64,000 nucleotides of DNA, taken from the sequence record OP729297.1; one strand, 5' to 3'. Each line of letters starts with the position of its first letter. Position 1 is the stretch's first letter. Both the position numbers and the translations under genes were made by a program. The notes under the pieces are model-generated. The model was given only the letters and a program-made list of their open reading frames with translations. It was not told the DNA's origin and ran no database searches. Below, piece after piece: positions 16,165 to 42,722 of the stretch.

Positions 16165-18684
16165 TTACTCGTCGTCATCGTCATCAGAAGTCTTCGCAGA
16201 CTTACTGATAGCGTTCTTCAACATCTCGTTGCCTTTGGTAGACTGCACGAACTTGAAGCACCACAGACGCAGGCCAGCAGGTTTGACTTTCAGTTTCTTA
16301 CACACGCCAACAACTTGCTCTTTGCTGCCGTTGATAAGAGTACGGAAGTCATCCCAGTCCATCTTAACGTCAGATGCGAGCGGGCATGGCGCCTTGATCT
16401 TGAAGCTCTTACGAGTGCCGTTGATCAGGCCGAGAGTTTTCAGGTAATGCCACGTATCGAACACTGGGTCGAAGCCACGCGCTTCACCGTTGCCGTCAGC
16501 TTCCCACAGACGTAACCAAGTCTGCTGGTTAGGGATGCCGCCCATCTTGTTCTTGATGGTCTTGGCTGCAATGAAACGGTAGCGGTCGGTACCACCTTCA
16601 ACAGTTACAGACTTCTCACCAACGATACCCGGTGCGTCTTTCATTGTCGGCCAGCCCTGAGGCACAGCACGAGAAGCCAGACGAACACGCACGTCAGAGT
16701 TGTGGCTAACGAAACCGTTAGTGATCACAACAGACGTTTCTTCGACGTTCACATCCCAGAACTCCACAGGATTGACCAGAGCTTTCAGCGTGAACGGAAC
16801 AGGAACGATAGAGTTATCGAAGTTATACCAGTCGTCGATGTACGCCAGTTGCTGCATCAGCAGGTCGTACTGGTCATCGTAACCTTCAATCTGCTTATGC
16901 AGAATCAGGTCGAGAGCCTGTGCGAAGTCCTGCTCTGGCGCCAGATAGATTTTATCCTGGCCAGTCTGCAACTGATAGTCCAGCACATAGCGAGTCAGTT
17001 CAGGGAACACGTCAGCGATCACAGTCAGCATCTGAGTCTGACGTTGACGGCTGGTGGCCTCGAAGCTGATACCAGCAAACGCACCGAGTTCTCCCTGCGC
17101 TACCGCCGCTTCCAGCTCGTGGTAGTTCAGGCCAGGGATATGCAGGCCGCTTTCGTCGGCGTAAGCATAGATACCGATAGACAGCAGGTGACGTGCCCAC
17201 AGAGAGAACGTGTGAACATCGTCCTGATCGCCAATCATATCAGTGGTCAGTACGTTCGCAGCAAACGTAGTGTCGCCAGCAACGGCCAGAGGCAATTGTA
17301 CGCTCTTGAAGTCAGCGTTACCTAGCATCTGATAAATCAGACTGCTTGACAGGTCGAACTCGTCAGGCACGTTCGCTTTCAGTTCTTTCACAGGCGGTAC
17401 ACGCAGACCTGCGTACTGGCCTTTCTGCTCTGGATATTGAGCAAGCTGGTTGAGCGTGTTCCACTCAGGACGCAGCACAGCCATACCATCAGCAGTCGTG
17501 TCATACATGAAGGTGAACTGACGATGTTCAGCGCTGCCTACATACGCATGACCACCAGCGTTCAGTTCGACCGGGAACGGAGCGTCATCAACTTTCCACG
17601 CGCCATTGATCTTCTGGAAGCCGTCGAACGATTCGACCATAACTTCCGTACCAGCATCGATCAGCTCTTTGATCTGAGGTGCAGTCAGCACGCCGTGATC
17701 AGTACGAATCAGAGTATCGCGGTCGAAGCAATAGAACTTCAACGCGTCACCGCCAGGCTCATACTCAGGTGAGCCGAACATAACAGCAGGCTTCTGACGT
17801 AACTGGTTAACGCCAACGATGGTCATCATCTTACGACGCATACCACCACGGAAACGTTTGATGCCGTCGGAGAACATACGCGCTTGCAGCGCCATTGCTT
17901 TCGAGCCTTCGTCATCATCGACCTGATCCGGCATCATTGCTGGATAGGAGTCAACGATAACCATCGCCTGCATGTGTCCGTCTGGTGCAGGTACTTTGAA
18001 CTGGTTGTTACGGCTGAACCATTTCTTGTCATACTTACCAGCCAGCTTCTTCGCGTTCTCTTTGTTGTTCTCAAAGATGTAGTACGCGGTACCGTCTTTC
18101 TCAACGATCTTATCTGGCAGACGACGACGCAGCATCGACATATAATCGAAGAAGCGCTCACCGTTGTCTGGTGCATAGTAACGGATCTTAGGCTTAACGA
18201 TCCAGCTACCGTCTTCATCATCACGCACACCGAAGATAGTTTTCGGGTCAACGCGAACGCCGAACGTTTTCAACTGACCAGCAACGTACTCTGCGTCGGT
18301 TGAACCTTCGTAGTCAAACACTACGCTAATGCCAGAGTAATGCAGACGAATCAGGCTCGCCATAATACTCATGGTCATTGTTGACTTACAAGACTGCTCA
18401 CCGCCGCTAAACGTGTACCAGCCACCAGGGACAATACCACCGGACAGGAACATGTCGAGTGCGAGACAGCCTGTTGAGATACGAGGTGCGTGACGCGCTG
18501 CATCCTGCGAACTTACTTTCGTTTTCTTTTCGATGCCATCAAGAACATCGTCCATCAAACTAGCCAGGTCAAAGCCCATGACTTCTACGCCGCCAACATC
18601 ATCGGCCGCGAATGCTTTACCTTTCTTGGCTTTGGTTTTACCTTCGGCTTCTTTTTCAGCCTTGATTCGTTTCGCTTTAGCCAT
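16165..18684 (-). CDS. recA: RecA/UvsX-like recombinase containing an intein
   Basis: TGCLALD..GGI..G, Walker A GGEQSCKST, DYEG, VDS..AM, NQLRQK, PGGDALKFY. Confidence 0.93.
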   Translation of the reverse strand: MAKAKRIKAEKEAEGKTKAKKGKAFAADDVGGVEVMGFDLASLMDDVLDGIEKKTKVSSQDAARHAPRISTGCLALDMFLSGGIVPGGWYTFSGGEQSCKSTMTMSIMASLIRLHYSGISVVFDYEGSTDAEYVAGQLKTFGVRVDPKTIFGVRDDEDGSWIVKPKIRYYAPDNGERFFDYMSMLRRRLPDKIVEKDGTAYYIFENNKENAKKLAGKYDKKWFSRNNQFKVPAPDGHMQAMVIVDSYPAMMPDQVDDDEGSKAMALQARMFSDGIKRFRGGMRRKMMTIVGVNQLRQKPAVMFGSPEYEPGGDALKFYCFDRDTLIRTDHGVLTAPQIKELIDAGTEVMVESFDGFQKINGAWKVDDAPFPVELNAGGHAYVGSAEHRQFTFMYDTTADGMAVLRPEWNTLNQLAQYPEQKGQYAGLRVPPVKELKANVPDEFDLSSSLIYQMLGNADFKSVQLPLAVAGDTTFAANVLTTDMIGDQDDVHTFSLWARHLLSIGIYAYADESGLHIPGLNYHELEAAVAQGELGAFAGISFEATSRQRQTQMLTVIADVFPELTRYVLDYQLQTGQDKIYLAPEQDFAQALDLILHKQIEGYDDQYDLLMQQLAYIDDWYNFDNSIVPVPFTLKALVNPVEFWDVNVEETSVVITNGFVSHNSDVRVRLASRAVPQGWPTMKDAPGIVGEKSVTVEGGTDRYRFIAAKTIKNKMGGIPNQQTWLRLWEADGNGEARGFDPVFDTWHYLKTLGLINGTRKSFKIKAPCPLASDVKMDWDDFRTLINGSKEQVVGVCKKLKVKPAGLRLWCFKFVQSTKGNEMLKNAISKSAKTSDDDDDE
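16699..17730 (-). mobile_element. intein (344 aa) in RecA
   Basis: Begins CFDRDT (block A), block B AEHRQF, block F FWDVNVE, ends VSHN followed by Ser. Confidence 0.92.
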
Positions 18685-18706
18685 TTGTGCTATAGTCCAG
18701 ATTGAG

Positions 18707-18733
18707 AAAAGAAGGGGCAGCCTAAGCTACCCC
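18707..18733 (-). terminator. intrinsic terminator
   Basis: GGGGTAGC-TTAG-GCTGCCCC followed by TTCTTTT. Confidence 0.75.
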
Positions 18734-18741
18734 GTTACCGA

Positions 18742-19983
18742 TTACTTTTTCTTTTTCTTTTTCTTCTTCGGCGCGTCGTCATCATCGTCATCAGAAGATT
18801 TCTTTTTCTTCTTCTTATCGGATGATTTCACCTTGTCAGAAGATTTCTTTTTCTTCTTCTTAGGTGCATCGTCTTCGTCGTCGTCATCATCGTCCGACTT
18901 CTTAGACTTCTTAGACTTCACCTTCGAGGACTTTTTCTTTTTCGAAGGACGATCGTCATCATCGTCTTCGTCATCGTCATCTTCGTCATCGTCTAACAGC
19001 TTACGAGACTTAGACGCTTTTGACTTCTTGGACTTGGATGGACGGTCATCGTCGTCATCTTCATCCTCGTCGTCATCGTCATCGTTGCGACGTTTTTTCT
19101 TGTCTGCCTTGCCGCCTTTCTTCTTGCGGCCCAGCGCCATGTCATCGTCGTCATCGTCTTCGTCATCATCACCATCATCGTTGGTGTTGACACCGATAAC
19201 GTCCATCTTTTTGAAGTCTGCCATAGCGGCGGCTTCATCCAGACGACCCAGCATGTCGTAGATTTCGTTCCAGTTGTCGAAGTCCCAGGTCAGGTAACCC
19301 TTTTCTTCTTCGGTCAGCGGAGTGTGATCGCCACGTTCGATGGTGTAACGCTCGGCCGGAGATTTTTTGGCGTTGTATTTGATTTCAATATCGCAGCCAT
19401 ACTTCGGATGGTTAACCTGGAACGCCTGCTTAGACTTCTTACCAGACTTCTTATCTTTGACCGTGTGAATGTTACGTTCACCCAGCTCGCGGATTTTGCC
19501 TGCCAGAGAGTTAGACAGCGGAATACACATAACAGGAGTCCAAGACTCACTGCCCATTTCTTTCTTGCCTGTCTTCTGCTCTTGCTTAGTGAGCTTAGGC
19601 ATTTTACGCGGTGCAGCAGCCTGCTCGTCACGAATGATTGCCTGTGCGTACCACTTATAGTCGTACTGCGCTGGCGCACCAGATTCGTCGTTACCGTGAG
19701 CGATACCACAGTACGGACACTTCATACCGTTCAGAGGTTTGTTCTGATTGTCCGGGTCGAAGCTAACGCACATGCGCGGGATTTTGATCTCTTTGTCTTT
19801 ATCTTTGCCGCCCATGATCTTGATCCAGTGCTTCTTGATTGGAAGCAGGTCAAGGTCAAGCAGACGAATTGATACCCAGTTGCCGTTTGCTTTCTTCGAA
19901 AGAGGGAAGATTTCAAAGATCTCTGACTCACGCAAGCTATCGCGCTTGCTGTTGTCTTGAATGTCACCAAATCCACGTGCCAT
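18742..19983 (-). CDS. single-stranded DNA-binding protein (T4 gp32-like core) with Asp/Lys low-complexity tail
   Basis: WVSIRLL..KHW..C..CPYC..WYAQAIIR..HPKYGCDIEIK pattern; adjacent to recA. Confidence 0.75.
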   Translation of the reverse strand: MARGFGDIQDNSKRDSLRESEIFEIFPLSKKANGNWVSIRLLDLDLLPIKKHWIKIMGGKDKDKEIKIPRMCVSFDPDNQNKPLNGMKCPYCGIAHGNDESGAPAQYDYKWYAQAIIRDEQAAAPRKMPKLTKQEQKTGKKEMGSESWTPVMCIPLSNSLAGKIRELGERNIHTVKDKKSGKKSKQAFQVNHPKYGCDIEIKYNAKKSPAERYTIERGDHTPLTEEEKGYLTWDFDNWNEIYDMLGRLDEAAAMADFKKMDVIGVNTNDDGDDDEDDDDDDMALGRKKKGGKADKKKRRNDDDDDEDEDDDDDRPSKSKKSKASKSRKLLDDDEDDDDEDDDDDRPSKKKKSSKVKSKKSKKSDDDDDDEDDAPKKKKKKSSDKVKSSDKKKKKKSSDDDDDDAPKKKKKKKK

Positions 19984-20033: not shown

Positions 20034-21071
20034 TTAGGCTAGCCCTTGAGCCTGCATATGTTTGCGCATCTGTTCAAGTTCGAACTTATCGAACTCCTCA
20101 CCAACGTCCATCGTTAGACGAGCAACGCCGAGTGGGTCTACGCGCTTAATAAGCAGCCTCAGTTTTTCGGTACGTCTTTCACTATCTACGTGATCTTCTA
20201 AGTGATGATGGTCACTCACTTTTTGATGTAGGGACGCGTCCGCACCTTCATCAGATTCATTCGCAGGAGTATCGAGACTTACCGAGAAATTCAGAGAAGT
20301 GGTATCTTCACCTGTCGCCAGTTTCTTACGTTGAGTCTGGGGAATAGTGTACGCGATGCCGTATTCATGCTCGCTACTACTACAGGTTTGTGCGTTCAAG
20401 ATCCACCACTTCGTATAACTCACAATCGCACCACGCGACGAGTCATACTTGTTGATAGCCACGATGACGTTACGCAGGAAGTTCTGGCGCACGTCTTTGC
20501 TGTCGTACAGCTTACCGCGGTTCGTATCAACGTAGAATTTTGTTTGCTTGCTGCATAGTCTATAGAAGTCAGCAACTACCGAGTGGAAGTATTCCATGAA
20601 CTGCGGTAGAAGGTCATTCAGACGGCACAACGCGATAAAGAGTTTGGAACGAGACTCTGCGCCAAACATCTTCACGTATGCGTTCAATCGTTTCGAATAC
20701 GCTTCGCGCTTGATAGGGTCTTGCGTCGAAATGAATCCGCGATAGAGATCAACATACGTCGCGTAGTATCGCTTAATTACATTTTCCAGGAAGACGTAGA
20801 TGAAGTTGCGCTCCATTTTCAGTTCCTGGATATAAATCATTTTCTGATCACGAGGCACAGAGAGCGCCTTAATCAGAAGGCTAATCGCACGGTCACGCGT
20901 TTCTGCGTTATACGGCTTTCGCTTCTTATTCGACGTAATCATGTTCAACAGATAGGTCAGTTGCACATCGAATACGTTCGTGTTCTCAACAATCTCACGG
21001 AGGCAGTCGTGAAGCATGGTGTCCATGACGCTTTCTATCTGACCGCCTGTGAGATTCGACTTATTGTTCAT
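20034..21071 (-). CDS. phage sigma-70-like factor (regions 2-3, no clear region 4)
   Basis: DVRQNFLRNVIVAINKYDSSRGAIVSYTKWWILNA (region 2.2-2.4); VSLDTP (region 3). Confidence 0.85.
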   Translation of the reverse strand: MNNKSNLTGGQIESVMDTMLHDCLREIVENTNVFDVQLTYLLNMITSNKKRKPYNAETRDRAISLLIKALSVPRDQKMIYIQELKMERNFIYVFLENVIKRYYATYVDLYRGFISTQDPIKREAYSKRLNAYVKMFGAESRSKLFIALCRLNDLLPQFMEYFHSVVADFYRLCSKQTKFYVDTNRGKLYDSKDVRQNFLRNVIVAINKYDSSRGAIVSYTKWWILNAQTCSSSEHEYGIAYTIPQTQRKKLATGEDTTSLNFSVSLDTPANESDEGADASLHQKVSDHHHLEDHVDSERRTEKLRLLIKRVDPLGVARLTMDVGEEFDKFELEQMRKHMQAQGLA

Positions 21072-21103
21072 GGTCAAATACACCTGTTAGTTGCTTTGAC
21101 TCT

Positions 21104-41435: not shown

Positions 41436-42722
41436 ATGGCGAAAGAAGAAAAGAAAAAGAAGAAGTCGCGTTCGTTCGGTGACGATAAGCCATCGAAAAA
41501 GAAAGGCGGTTCTTCCGAGTCTGTAGAGTTGACCACGATTAACTTTGCAGACCAATTCCGACCGAAGAAGATTGAAGACTATGTTGGTCAAGACCACATC
41601 GTTAAGATCATGAAAGGTTGGCAGAAGTCGAAAACGATTCCATCAACGATGATCATTACTGGCCATCTTGGTTCTGGTAAAACAACGTTTGCTCGTCTGG
41701 TGGCGAAGTACATCAACTGTGAATCGTTCTCGGCCTGTGGCAAATGTCGTTCGTGTGAAATGCACGACCGCGGCGCACACCCTGACGAGCAAGAGTTCGA
41801 TATGGGCGGTGAAGCTGGTAAAGTTGACGGCAGCCAGAAGATTGTGGACAGCGCACCATTGAGTCCGATGTTCAAACGTCGTGTGTTCATCTTCGACGAA
41901 TCGCATCTCATGTCCAGCGCAGCCGAATCGAAGTTCCTTAAGATCACCGAGCAGCCACCAGCGCACGTTGTATTCATCTTCGTAACAACGAACCCAGAGA
42001 AGATGAAGAACACGATGATCAGCCGCATGACGCAACTGCCTATCAGGCCGATTCCTACTGACGTGATTCATAAGCGTCTGTTGGAGATCAGTGACCAGCT
42101 TGATATCATGCCGAAGAAAGATAAGGCGCGTGATAAAGCAGACGCAGCATTGCATCAGGTTGCTGAATATGCTGGTGGCCAGATGCGTGGTGCAATCACC
42201 ATGTTGCAGAACATCTACGCTTCGGTGAAAGGTGGTGAGGACTTCGATAAGAACCTCGTTGCCGAACTCGCAGCAGCAGATCCAGAGATCGATATGGAAG
42301 CGAAAGCTGTCCAGATGATCGGTGCGTATCTTGCGATGGACCTGATTGGTGTTATTCAGTTCCTGCGTGAAGCGAACAACCCTCGTGCAATCGTAGCGAA
42401 AGCTCGTTGGATTATTCACGGTGTGTTGGGGCATTATGCCGAAACGAATAAGTGGCAGTCGGCTGGCCTCAAGATGTTCATGAACATGGTCAAGAAAGAC
42501 AACATCAAAGTCAATCTGGTCAGTTTGGTGTATCTGCAATCCGCATTAGCAGAAGCCGAAGTAGCATTCAACTCTACATCGGTGCCAGCAGATATCATGC
42601 TGGAAACTGTGACCACCAGAACCATGTCTGATATCTATAGCGGCAAGCTGGTGGTTGATTTGGGTAACGACGACGAAGACGACGAACCCAAAGAGAAGAA
42701 GAAAAAGAAAAAGAAGAAGTAA
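41436..42722 (+). CDS. dnaX: DNA polymerase III gamma/tau-like clamp-loader subunit
   Basis: FRP..EDYVGQ, GHLGSGKTT, INC..CGKCRSC, DESH, LKITEQPP, AGGQMRGA. Confidence 0.92.
   Translation: MAKEEKKKKKSRSFGDDKPSKKKGGSSESVELTTINFADQFRPKKIEDYVGQDHIVKIMKGWQKSKTIPSTMIITGHLGSGKTTFARLVAKYINCESFSACGKCRSCEMHDRGAHPDEQEFDMGGEAGKVDGSQKIVDSAPLSPMFKRRVFIFDESHLMSSAAESKFLKITEQPPAHVVFIFVTTNPEKMKNTMISRMTQLPIRPIPTDVIHKRLLEISDQLDIMPKKDKARDKADAALHQVAEYAGGQMRGAITMLQNIYASVKGGEDFDKNLVAELAAADPEIDMEAKAVQMIGAYLAMDLIGVIQFLREANNPRAIVAKARWIIHGVLGHYAETNKWQSAGLKMFMNMVKKDNIKVNLVSLVYLQSALAEAEVAFNSTSVPADIMLETVTTRTMSDIYSGKLVVDLGNDDEDDEPKEKKKKKKKK

What the first reader, a model, noticed from the sequence alone, without database searches (positions are those of the whole stretch)
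18742..19182. SSB with a ~145-aa tail of alternating poly-Asp and poly-Lys blocks
Seen: after the gp32-like core, five acidic blocks alternate with five basic blocks (units DDDDDRPSK x2 and DDAPKKKKKK x2), ending in KKKKKKKK. Established: T4 gp32 and bacterial SSB have short acidic tails. Blocky polyampholytes are a recognised driver of liquid-liquid phase separation. Inference: this SSB may nucleate a membraneless replication compartment.
Basis: partly seen in the sequence, partly recalled or inferred. Interest (0 to 1): 0.66.

Follow-up and report, generated by a model that had tools for sequence, protein, structure and literature searches.

The report
Phage SSB with charge-block tail
A giant phage of the fire-blight bacterium makes a T4-gp32-like single-stranded-DNA-binding protein with a long floppy tail of alternating aspartate and lysine blocks; hundreds of related phages share this tail, and one unit of it also sits on the phage's helicase and clamp loader, so it probably acts as an electrostatic tag that gathers the replication machinery.

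Summary
ORF 18742-19983 (-) of Erwinia jumbo phage vB_Ea_2910A encodes a 413-aa protein. Residues 269-413 form five acidic and five basic blocks and end in eight lysines. The tail is near neutral but extremely segregated: kappa is 0.60 against 0.11 +/- 0.03 for shuffles.

The core has no Pfam or PDB sequence match, but its AlphaFold model has the gp32 fold (Z 11 to T4 and RB69 gp32; next hit 3.7). The tail is predicted to be disordered.

The tail is a hallmark of the family. 157 of 167 representatives carry one, built from the same unit: acidic tract, Pro, Lys/Arg/Ser tract. Only the C-terminal tip varies: basic, acidic/aromatic, or the bacterial SSB motif DDDIPF.

New here: in a near-identical genome, exactly three of 1507 ORFs match a loose pattern for this unit. 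They are the SSB, the DnaB-like helicase and the clamp loader.

My reading is that the tail is a multivalent electrostatic hub for SSB self-association and replisome recruitment. A true membraneless compartment is plausible but not shown. I class it as a new variant of a known kind. I found no paper describing it. Other notes in this scan report SSB-type tips on other phage proteins, not this tail.

The parts
18742..19983 (-). SSB gene, 413 codons plus stop (P0001)
   Evidence: ORF list and translation. PHROG 15004 'single strand DNA binding protein', E 4.7e-147, profile covered 4-421 of 421. 100% identical to OP729297.1.
19927..19983 (-). N-terminal 19 residues, low-confidence and flexible, in the position of gp32's cooperativity (B) domain
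   Evidence: pLDDT 50-69. VIA alignments to gp32 begin at model residues 18-24, matching gp32 residues 24-29. MARGF...RD.LRE is conserved.
19198..19926 (-). gp32-fold OB core (aa 20-262) with candidate zinc ligands H52, C72, C89, C92
   Evidence: pLDDT 82-95. VIA Z 11.4 to RB69 gp32 and 11.0 to T4 gp32; next hit 3.7. Foldseek probability 1.0. Ligands conserved in 69-74 of 81 sequences. CPYC aligns to gp32 C87/C90.
18745..19179 (-). Disordered charge-block tail (aa 269-413): five acidic and five basic blocks; four of the five acid-to-basic junctions hold Pro
   Evidence: kappa 0.60, z 15. pLDDT about 50 with no secondary structure. Lys-run codons interleave AAG and AAA; longest A-run 6 against 11.7 simulated, P 0.016.
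18745..18768 (-). Poly-Lys (K8) C-terminal tip
   Evidence: All 9 rows of the well-supported clade that holds this protein end in poly-Lys.
18714..18733 (-). Terminator-like GC hairpin plus T-run, starting 9 nt after the stop codon
   Evidence: Consensus scan only.
41436..42722 (+). Clamp loader (DnaX-like). It carries the same unit at its C-terminus (DDEDDEPKEKKKKKKKK) and a K-block plus DDKPSKKK at its N-terminus.
   Evidence: Translation. PHROG 5846, E 2e-111. Tags conserved in homologues down to about 54% identity. One of only three ORFs that match the unit pattern.
16165..18684 (-). UvsX/RecA-like recombinase directly downstream. K-rich N-terminus, C-terminus SDDDDDE, and a 344-aa intein-like insert.
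   Evidence: The SSB-RecA gene order is conserved in distant relatives.
20034..21083 (-). Phage sigma factor directly upstream (conserved sigma-SSB-RecA gene order)
   Evidence: PHROG 17569, E 2.7e-157. Gene order seen.

Best explanation
The gene encodes the phage's replication and recombination SSB. It has a gp32-fold, probably zinc-binding OB core, followed by a 145-residue intrinsically disordered, nearly neutral, strongly charge-segregated tail. The tail is built of about five tandem units of the form 'Asp/Glu tract, Pro, Lys/Ser tract'.

Shown here: the fold, the predicted disorder, the charge patterning, the family-wide conservation of the unit grammar, and the presence of the same unit on the helicase and clamp loader.

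Inferred mechanism:
1. In free protein, the acidic tracts fold back on the basic DNA-binding cleft and on the protein's own Lys tracts. This lowers DNA affinity, as the acidic tails of gp32, T7 gp2.5 and E. coli SSB do.
2. On ssDNA the tails are released at high local density. They pair block against block with neighbouring tails. This raises cooperativity and produces a dense, salt-sensitive, condensate-like coat.
3. The DnaB-like helicase and the clamp loader each carry one or two copies of the same unit, and the RecA-like recombinase carries an acidic tip. They partition into this tail layer as low-valency clients. The SSB tail therefore acts as the replisome's electrostatic hub.
4. In this clade the poly-Lys tip takes the place held in relatives by an acidic/aromatic tip or by the bacterial DDDIPF tip.
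For: Fold and disorder:
- gp32 fold: VIA Z 11.4 and 11.0, rmsd 3.8-4.0 over 183-185 residues; next unrelated hit Z 3.7. Foldseek probability 1.0. The atlas search pointed to PF08804 clusters.
- H52/C72/C89/C92 are conserved, and CPYC aligns to gp32 C87/C90.
- The tail is predicted disordered.

Patterning and selection:
- kappa 0.60, z 15.
- Lys-run codons avoid long A-runs.

Conservation:
- The family has 423 clusters at 50% identity.
- 157 of 167 representatives have tails of at least 30 aa, with 2-13 blocks of each sign.
- 468 of 523 acid-to-basic junctions hold Pro.
- Proteins with identical cores differ only in run lengths, always in frame.

Shared unit:
- Under the loose pattern it occurs in exactly 3 of 1507 ORFs of the 97.9%-identical genome: SSB, DnaB-like helicase and clamp loader.
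- It is confirmed in the window's own genome.
- It is conserved in the homologues of these proteins.
- It is absent from the clamp loader beside an SSB with a DIPF tip.

Precedents: alternating charge blocks drive RNase E bodies. Nucleolar D/E tracts and K-blocks co-condense. E. coli SSB and T4 gp32 condense in vitro.
Against: - There is no experimental datum on this protein or on any family member.
- AlphaFold disorder and sequence statistics cannot show binding or condensation.
- In E. coli SSB, a charged linker (from P. falciparum SSB) or a Lys-substituted tip abolishes phase separation, so charge alone is not sufficient.
- gp32 is monomeric, which lowers valency compared with tetrameric SSB.
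- Cytoplasmic salt and polyanions (RNA, DNA) could screen the blocks or compete for them.
- The helicase and clamp-loader tags are strong only in the Erwinia/Dickeya clade. They are partial in PaBG and Lu11 and absent in RSL1 and BcepSauron. Any client recruitment by tags is therefore not family-wide.
- The shared unit could instead be read by a common third partner.
Confidence: 0.55

Rival explanations
1. Compartment reading. The tail drives true liquid-liquid phase separation in the infected cell and nucleates a microscopically distinct, membraneless replication factory. This would stand in for the protein-shelled nucleus of other jumbo phages.
For: Everything listed for the hub model also applies here. 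In addition:
- The tail has near-zero net charge with extreme blockiness, the regime in which the cited work finds blocky-charge tails condensing.
- The unit valencies look like a scaffold and its clients: 5 units on SSB, 1-2 on helicase and clamp loader.
- The taxonomy lines give genus Alexandravirus with no family assigned, so the record is not filed under Chimalliviridae.
Against: No imaging or biochemistry exists. Local fuzzy complexes at forks would explain the same sequence features without a mesoscale phase. Absence of a chimallin gene was not tested here.
Confidence: 0.25
2. Regulatory tail only. The tail is an autoinhibitory flap and spacer whose working end is the tip. The alternating blocks merely set linker compaction, with no higher-order assembly or client recruitment.
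For: - Acidic tails of gp32, T7 gp2.5 and E. coli SSB compete with ssDNA for the core (established knowledge; tip-core contacts are cited).
- The first block after the core is always acidic.
- The tip type switches at least 45 times on the tree, as expected if the tip is the functional module.
Against: - A flap does not need 2-13 repeated units or a conserved Pro at 89% of junctions.
- It does not explain the same unit on the helicase and clamp loader.
- The poly-Lys tip cannot dock on a basic DNA cleft.
Confidence: 0.15
3. Second nucleic-acid-binding or DNA-mimic module. Either the Lys blocks bind duplex DNA or RNA (histone-H1-like compaction, or control of the protein's own mRNA), or the Asp tracts mimic DNA to soak up host DNA-binding or defence proteins.
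For: - Lys/Ser/Pro-rich blocks resemble basic DNA-binding tails.
- One Rhizobium-phage homologue was annotated 'Nop14-like'.
- SSB is expected to be abundant.
- A terminator-like hairpin follows the gene.
Against: The near-exact charge balance within each molecule favours intramolecular or tail-to-tail neutralisation over free polycation or polyanion behaviour. No defence-related context was seen. Nothing here tests binding.
Confidence: 0.08
4. Neutral low-complexity expansion. Replication slippage in GAY and AAR repeats produced a functionless tail.
For: - Short tandem DNA repeats lie in the region.
- Run lengths vary between proteins with identical cores.
Against: - The tail is retained in 157 of 167 representatives across very deep divergence, always in frame.
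- The unit grammar and junction Pro are conserved.
- Lys is replaced by Arg/Ser in one lineage while the blocks are kept.
- Codon interleaving limits slippage.
Confidence: 0.03

Closest known systems
T4/RB69 gp32 (PDB 1GPC, 2A1K, 8GME; Pfam PF08804)
   Same: Same core fold (Z 11). A His/Cys3-type pattern, with CxxC aligned to gp32 C87/C90. A short flexible N-terminal segment. An acidic segment directly after the core. The gene sits beside the recombinase gene.
   Different: About 14% identity and no match to PF08804. gp32's tail is 48 aa with 15 acidic and 3 basic residues. This tail is 145 aa, with 57 acidic and 51 basic residues in ten blocks, and ends in K8.
E. coli SSB: disordered linker plus DDDIPF tip, which phase-separates in vitro
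   Same: Architecture of core, disordered linker and C-terminal tip. 31 of 167 relatives of this protein end in D[IVLM]P[FWY], the bacterial tip motif.
   Different: A different OB family and oligomeric state. The E. coli linker is Gly/Gln/Pro-rich with 3 charged residues; this tail is 74% charged. This protein's own tip is poly-Lys.
Caulobacter RNase E C-terminal domain (BR-bodies); Ddx4
   Same: A disordered region with alternating positive and negative blocks attached to a nucleic-acid enzyme. There, the region is necessary and sufficient for condensates and recruits client proteins.
   Different: Unrelated proteins acting on RNA, not ssDNA. Their blocks are 10-30 residues with milder charge density. 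No experiment exists for the phage tail.
Nucleolar D/E-tract and K-block proteins (UBF, nucleolin, NUCKS, LYAR, PolR1F; PMC11938373)
   Same: Long acidic tracts and Lys blocks tethered to nucleic-acid-binding domains. They co-condense by complex coacervation.
   Different: Eukaryotic. Their K-block class is defined as Glu-rich, whereas this tail is Asp-rich (51 D, 6 E). Here both grammars sit in one chain in strict alternation.
T7 gp2.5 and gp4 shared acidic C-terminal tails (established knowledge, not checked in a paper here)
   Same: The SSB and the replicative helicase of one phage carry look-alike C-terminal tails that organise the replisome.
   Different: The T7 tails are short, purely acidic and end in Phe. 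Here the shared element is an acid-Pro-Lys unit, repeated five times on the SSB.

Membership tests
gp32-type phage SSB (Pfam PF08804) | gp32 OB-fold core topology | tested here: met
   VIA Z 11.4 (RB69) and 11.0 (T4), 183-185 residues aligned, next hit Z 3.7. Foldseek E 3e-5, probability 1.0.
gp32-type phage SSB (Pfam PF08804) | Match to the PF08804 profile | tested here: not met
   No Pfam hit for the protein at E <= 0.1, nor PF08804 for any of 44 family members at E <= 1. hhalign against T4 gp32 gives probability 10.7%. Membership is by fold, not by the sequence model.
gp32-type phage SSB (Pfam PF08804) | Zinc-binding His/Cys3 subdomain (T4: H64, C77, C87, C90) | tested here: met
   H52, C72, C89 and C92 are kept in 72, 74, 72 and 69 of 81 sequences. 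CPYC aligns with gp32 CPVC. Metal binding itself was not tested.
gp32-type phage SSB (Pfam PF08804) | Basic N-terminal cooperativity domain with the KRKST motif | tested here: inconclusive
   A flexible, conserved 19-residue N-terminus is present, but it has no KRKST-like motif.
gp32-type phage SSB (Pfam PF08804) | Binds ssDNA cooperatively | not testable with these tools
   Needs biochemistry.
Bacterial SSB (core, disordered linker, DDDIPF tip) | C-terminal D-D-D-I-P-F tip | tested here: not met
   This protein ends in KKKKKKKK. The tip is present in 31 of 167 family representatives.
Bacterial SSB (core, disordered linker, DDDIPF tip) | Bacterial SSB OB domain | tested here: not met
   No Pfam hit at all. 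The fold matches gp32.
Charge-block condensate scaffolds (RNase E CTD, Ddx4, nucleolar IDRs) | Disordered region with alternating blocks of opposite charge | tested here: met
   pLDDT about 50 and no secondary structure. Ten blocks, kappa 0.60, z 15.
Charge-block condensate scaffolds (RNase E CTD, Ddx4, nucleolar IDRs) | 'K-blocks + E-rich regions' as defined by King et al. (fraction of E at least the fraction of D) | tested here: not met
   D 51 against E 6. The definition is quoted.
Charge-block condensate scaffolds (RNase E CTD, Ddx4, nucleolar IDRs) | Demonstrated salt-sensitive phase separation and client recruitment | not testable with these tools
   Needs purified protein and imaging.

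The most novel reading that the evidence does not exclude
A large group of jumbo phages that lack a protein-shelled nucleus uses a charge-block 'address code'. A pentavalent Asp-tract/Pro/Lys-tract tail on the SSB scaffolds a membraneless replication factory on ssDNA. One or two copies of the same unit on the helicase and clamp loader send those proteins into it. The swappable tail tip (poly-Lys, acidic/aromatic, or bacterial DDDIPF) decides whether host SSB partners are drawn in as well.
Probability: 0.25. Interest if true: 0.85.

Novelty: new variant of a known kind. Interest (0 to 1): 0.64.

Why it matters
SSB tails are the organising hubs of replication and repair, and how they work is an active question for E. 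coli SSB and T4 gp32.

This family offers a natural, extreme and highly evolvable version of such a tail. It is a nearly neutral polyampholyte with a charge-segregation value (kappa 0.60) about 15 standard deviations above shuffled versions of itself. It is present in more than 400 sequence clusters, with 2-13 units and three kinds of tip.

The same unit on the helicase and clamp loader gives a directly testable scaffold-and-client hypothesis for replisome assembly in a bacterial virus. It also gives a possible answer to how jumbo phages without a phage nucleus concentrate their replication machinery.

It is also a compact natural system for testing polyampholyte theory: unit number, blockiness and tip can each be varied.

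Tried and rejected
Searches that found nothing or little:
- Pfam on the protein and on 44 relatives: no family for the core.
- PDB sequence searches with the protein and with a profile: only low-complexity or zinc-ribbon noise.
- hhalign of the family profile against T4 gp32: weak, probability 10.7%. I used it only for the CxxC register.
- Literature searches for this tail in jumbo-phage SSBs: nothing. The PaBG paper does not discuss the SSB.

It was run later with alignment A2.
- No whole genome is held for the window. I scanned the 97.9%-identical pEa_SNUABM_33 record piece by piece instead and checked the helicase tail in the window's own record.
- My first automatic ORF pick for the Lu11 and RSL1 clamp loaders took the wrong strand. 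The Lu11 pick was corrected. The RSL1 re-pick still looks spurious, so RSL1's clamp loader is not established.

Not run:
- Complex prediction, because fuzzy electrostatic contacts of disordered tails are outside what it can judge.
- The reads tools, because expression level would not discriminate between the models.

Rejected readings:
- The plus-strand 242-aa ORF over the tail is a low-complexity shadow.
- Neutral slippage junk, for the reasons given under rival explanations.
- A frameshift or two-gene artefact. The ORF is continuous in all relatives and the PHROG profile spans it.

Full report
**What is there.** The window is 100% identical to Erwinia phage vB_Ea_2910A (OP729297.1), a 263-kb Alexandravirus-type jumbo phage of Erwinia amylovora. 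ORF 18742-19983 on the minus strand encodes 413 residues.

There are five Asp-rich blocks (6-14 residues, net charge -6 to -14) alternating with five Lys/Ser-rich blocks. DDDDDRPSK occurs twice, DDAPKKKKKK occurs twice, and the tail ends in K8. The tail holds 57 acidic and 51 basic residues out of 145, so its net charge is only -6.

The charges are extremely segregated. Kappa (my own implementation) is 0.603 against 0.108 +/- 0.033 for 5000 shuffles, with none above 0.29. Sequence charge decoration is -8.6, z = -6.

The Lys runs are encoded by interleaved AAG and AAA codons. The longest A-run is 6 nt, against a simulated mean of 11.7 (P = 0.016). This is what one expects if faithful transcription and translation of the runs is under selection.

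**What the core is.** Sequence methods fail. There is no Pfam hit for this protein or for 44 relatives. PDB sequence searches give nothing. Only PHROG 15004 ('single strand DNA binding protein') matches, and its profile spans the tail.

An AlphaFold2 model built on 81 homologues is confident for residues 20-260 (pLDDT 82-95). It leaves the tail without secondary structure at pLDDT about 50.

The core model matches RB69 and T4 gp32. Foldseek gives probability 1.0 and E 3e-5. VIA-align gives Z 11.4 and 11.0, rmsd 3.8-4.0 over 183-185 residues, and the next unrelated chain scores Z 3.7.

H52, C72, C89 and C92 are kept in 69-74 of 81 sequences. A weak profile alignment puts CPYC on gp32's C87-x2-C90. 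'gp32-like core' is therefore right at the level of fold and probable zinc site. However, the family lies outside Pfam's gp32 model, at about 14% identity.

**The tail is a family hallmark.** A word-indexed search found 95 homologues. An exhaustive HMMER search found 423 clusters at 50% identity.

All close relatives keep five acidic and five basic blocks. Proteins with 100% identical cores differ only by in-frame changes of run length.

Of 167 representatives, 157 have a tail of at least 30 residues, with 2-13 blocks of each sign. One lineage replaces Lys with Arg/Ser and keeps the blocks.

The unit has a grammar. 468 of 523 acid-to-basic junctions contain Pro, while basic-to-acid junctions often contain Val, Leu or Ser.

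Only the tip varies: basic (56), acidic with an aromatic residue (41), the bacterial SSB motif D[IVLM]P[FWY] (31), and plain acidic (24). On a tree of 147 cores the tip type changes at least 45 times (shuffled mean 71). This protein lies in a well-supported nine-member clade in which every member ends in poly-Lys.

The gene order sigma factor, SSB, RecA-like recombinase is kept in PaBG, Lu11, RSL1, BcepSauron and a Vibrio phage. SSB followed by the RecA-like gene is also kept on a distant metagenomic contig.

**A new observation.** The unit is not confined to the SSB.
- The clamp loader in the window (41436-42722, PHROG 5846) starts MAKEEKKKKKSRSFGDDKPSKKK and ends DDEDDEPKEKKKKKKKK.
- The DnaB-like helicase of the same genome ends DDDDDDDLPKKKKKRKSYDVA.
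- The recombinase next to the SSB has a Lys-rich N-terminus and ends SDDDDDE.

In a six-frame scan of 1507 ORFs of the 97.9%-identical pEa_SNUABM_33 genome, a loose pattern for 'acid tract, Pro, Lys tract' hit exactly three ORFs: helicase, clamp loader and SSB.

The tags are conserved in clamp-loader homologues down to about 54% identity. They are conserved in helicase homologues down to about 63% in strict form and about 50% in loose form. They are partial in PaBG and Lu11. The helicases of RSL1 and BcepSauron, whose SSBs end in acidic tips, and the BcepSauron clamp loader lack them; the RSL1 clamp-loader ORF I picked looks spurious, so it is not counted. A distant contig whose SSB ends in DIPF has an untagged clamp loader.

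**How it most likely works.** The items above are shown. What follows is inference.

Free SSB probably keeps its tail collapsed on itself and on the basic DNA cleft, as known acidic SSB tails do. On ssDNA the released tails are crowded and can pair block against block. This would raise cooperativity and give a dense, salt-sensitive layer. The helicase (six tags per hexamer) and the clamp loader (tags at both ends of each subunit) would partition into that layer as low-valency clients. In this reading the five-unit tail is a scaffold and the single units are address tags.

Precedents support the physics:
- The alternating charge blocks of Caulobacter RNase E are necessary and sufficient for BR-bodies and recruit degradosome clients.
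- Nucleolar D/E tracts and K-blocks co-condense.
- E. coli SSB condenses through its linker.
- T4 gp32 and UvsX form droplets in vitro with PEG.

There are cautions from the same literature. The net-negative, highly charged P. falciparum SSB linker, and a Lys-substituted tip, each abolish E. coli SSB condensation. This tail differs in being charge-balanced and blocky, but only experiment can tell whether that matters.

I put the electrostatic-hub reading at about 0.55. A true mesoscale replication compartment gets about 0.25. A purely autoinhibitory tail gets about 0.15. Second nucleic-acid-binding or mimicry roles get under 0.1, and neutral junk about 0.03.

**Comparison and novelty.** By fold the protein is a divergent gp32-type SSB. 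By tail logic it parallels bacterial SSB (linker plus tip), and many relatives even carry the bacterial tip. By sequence physics it resembles RNase E and nucleolar charge-block regions. The shared tails on SSB and helicase recall T7 gp2.5 and gp4 (established knowledge, not checked in a paper here).

The searches of the held library that targeted the tail found no paper describing it. Public records annotate these genes merely as SSB or as hypothetical.

Other notes in this scan report bacterial SSB-type tips on other phage proteins, not this tail.

I class it as a new variant of a known kind. Interest is moderately high because it yields a sharp, cheap experimental test.

Noticed in passing
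window 16699-17730 (-), inside ORF 16165-18684: The UvsX/RecA-like recombinase is 839 aa because of a 344-residue insert (aa 319-662). The insert begins with Cys after ...ALKFY and ends ...VSHN followed by Ser, which are the junction residues of an intein. No intein or homing-endonuclease Pfam domain was detected at E <= 0.1.
   Followed up: partly
P0078, P0081, P0082, P0086, P0093, P0094 and 25 further representatives; L002 8001-9356: Distant members of this gp32-fold SSB family end in the bacterial SSB C-terminal tip (DDDIPF, DDIPY, DDVPF). This suggests they plug into host SSB-partner proteins. The tip has been gained or lost many times.
   Followed up: partly
OP729297.1 138690-140114 (L008 331-1755), outside the window: The DnaB-like replicative helicase of the same phage ends in one acid-Pro-Lys unit, DDDDDDDLPKKKKKRKSYDVA. 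The unit is conserved in its homologues.
   Followed up: yes
P0069-P0077: In one metagenomic lineage (44-46% core identity) the basic blocks are Arg/Ser-rich (RSRRSKRSSS...), reminiscent of eukaryotic RS domains, and the acidic blocks are half Glu. The block architecture is unchanged.
   Followed up: no
L007 37641-38450 and 27862-29493 and 32947-35958; L005 5880-7883 (pEa_SNUABM_33 gp329, gp321, gp326, gp143): Several other proteins of the near-identical genome carry very long pure D/E tracts. gp329 is about half Asp/Glu over 130 residues. They have no Lys blocks, and their functions are unknown or annotated 'ATPase'.
   Followed up: no
L003 30146-30856; L007 42979-44628; L006 8007-8825 (pEa_SNUABM_33 gp049, gp335, gp182): A ParB-like protein and a topoisomerase II subunit have Lys-rich N-termini, and a 272-aa hypothetical protein has K5 and K7 blocks. 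These could be further members of the same electrostatic network.
   Followed up: no
window 18533-19261 (+): A 242-aa ORF rich in Ser and Phe on the opposite strand of the tail. It is a mirror artefact of the GAY/AAR low-complexity coding sequence, not a gene.
   Followed up: yes
window 18714-18733 (-): A strong terminator-like hairpin (8 pairs, 6 of them G-C, then a T-run) starts 9 nt after the SSB stop codon, before the recombinase gene. It may set the SSB-to-recombinase expression ratio.
   Followed up: no
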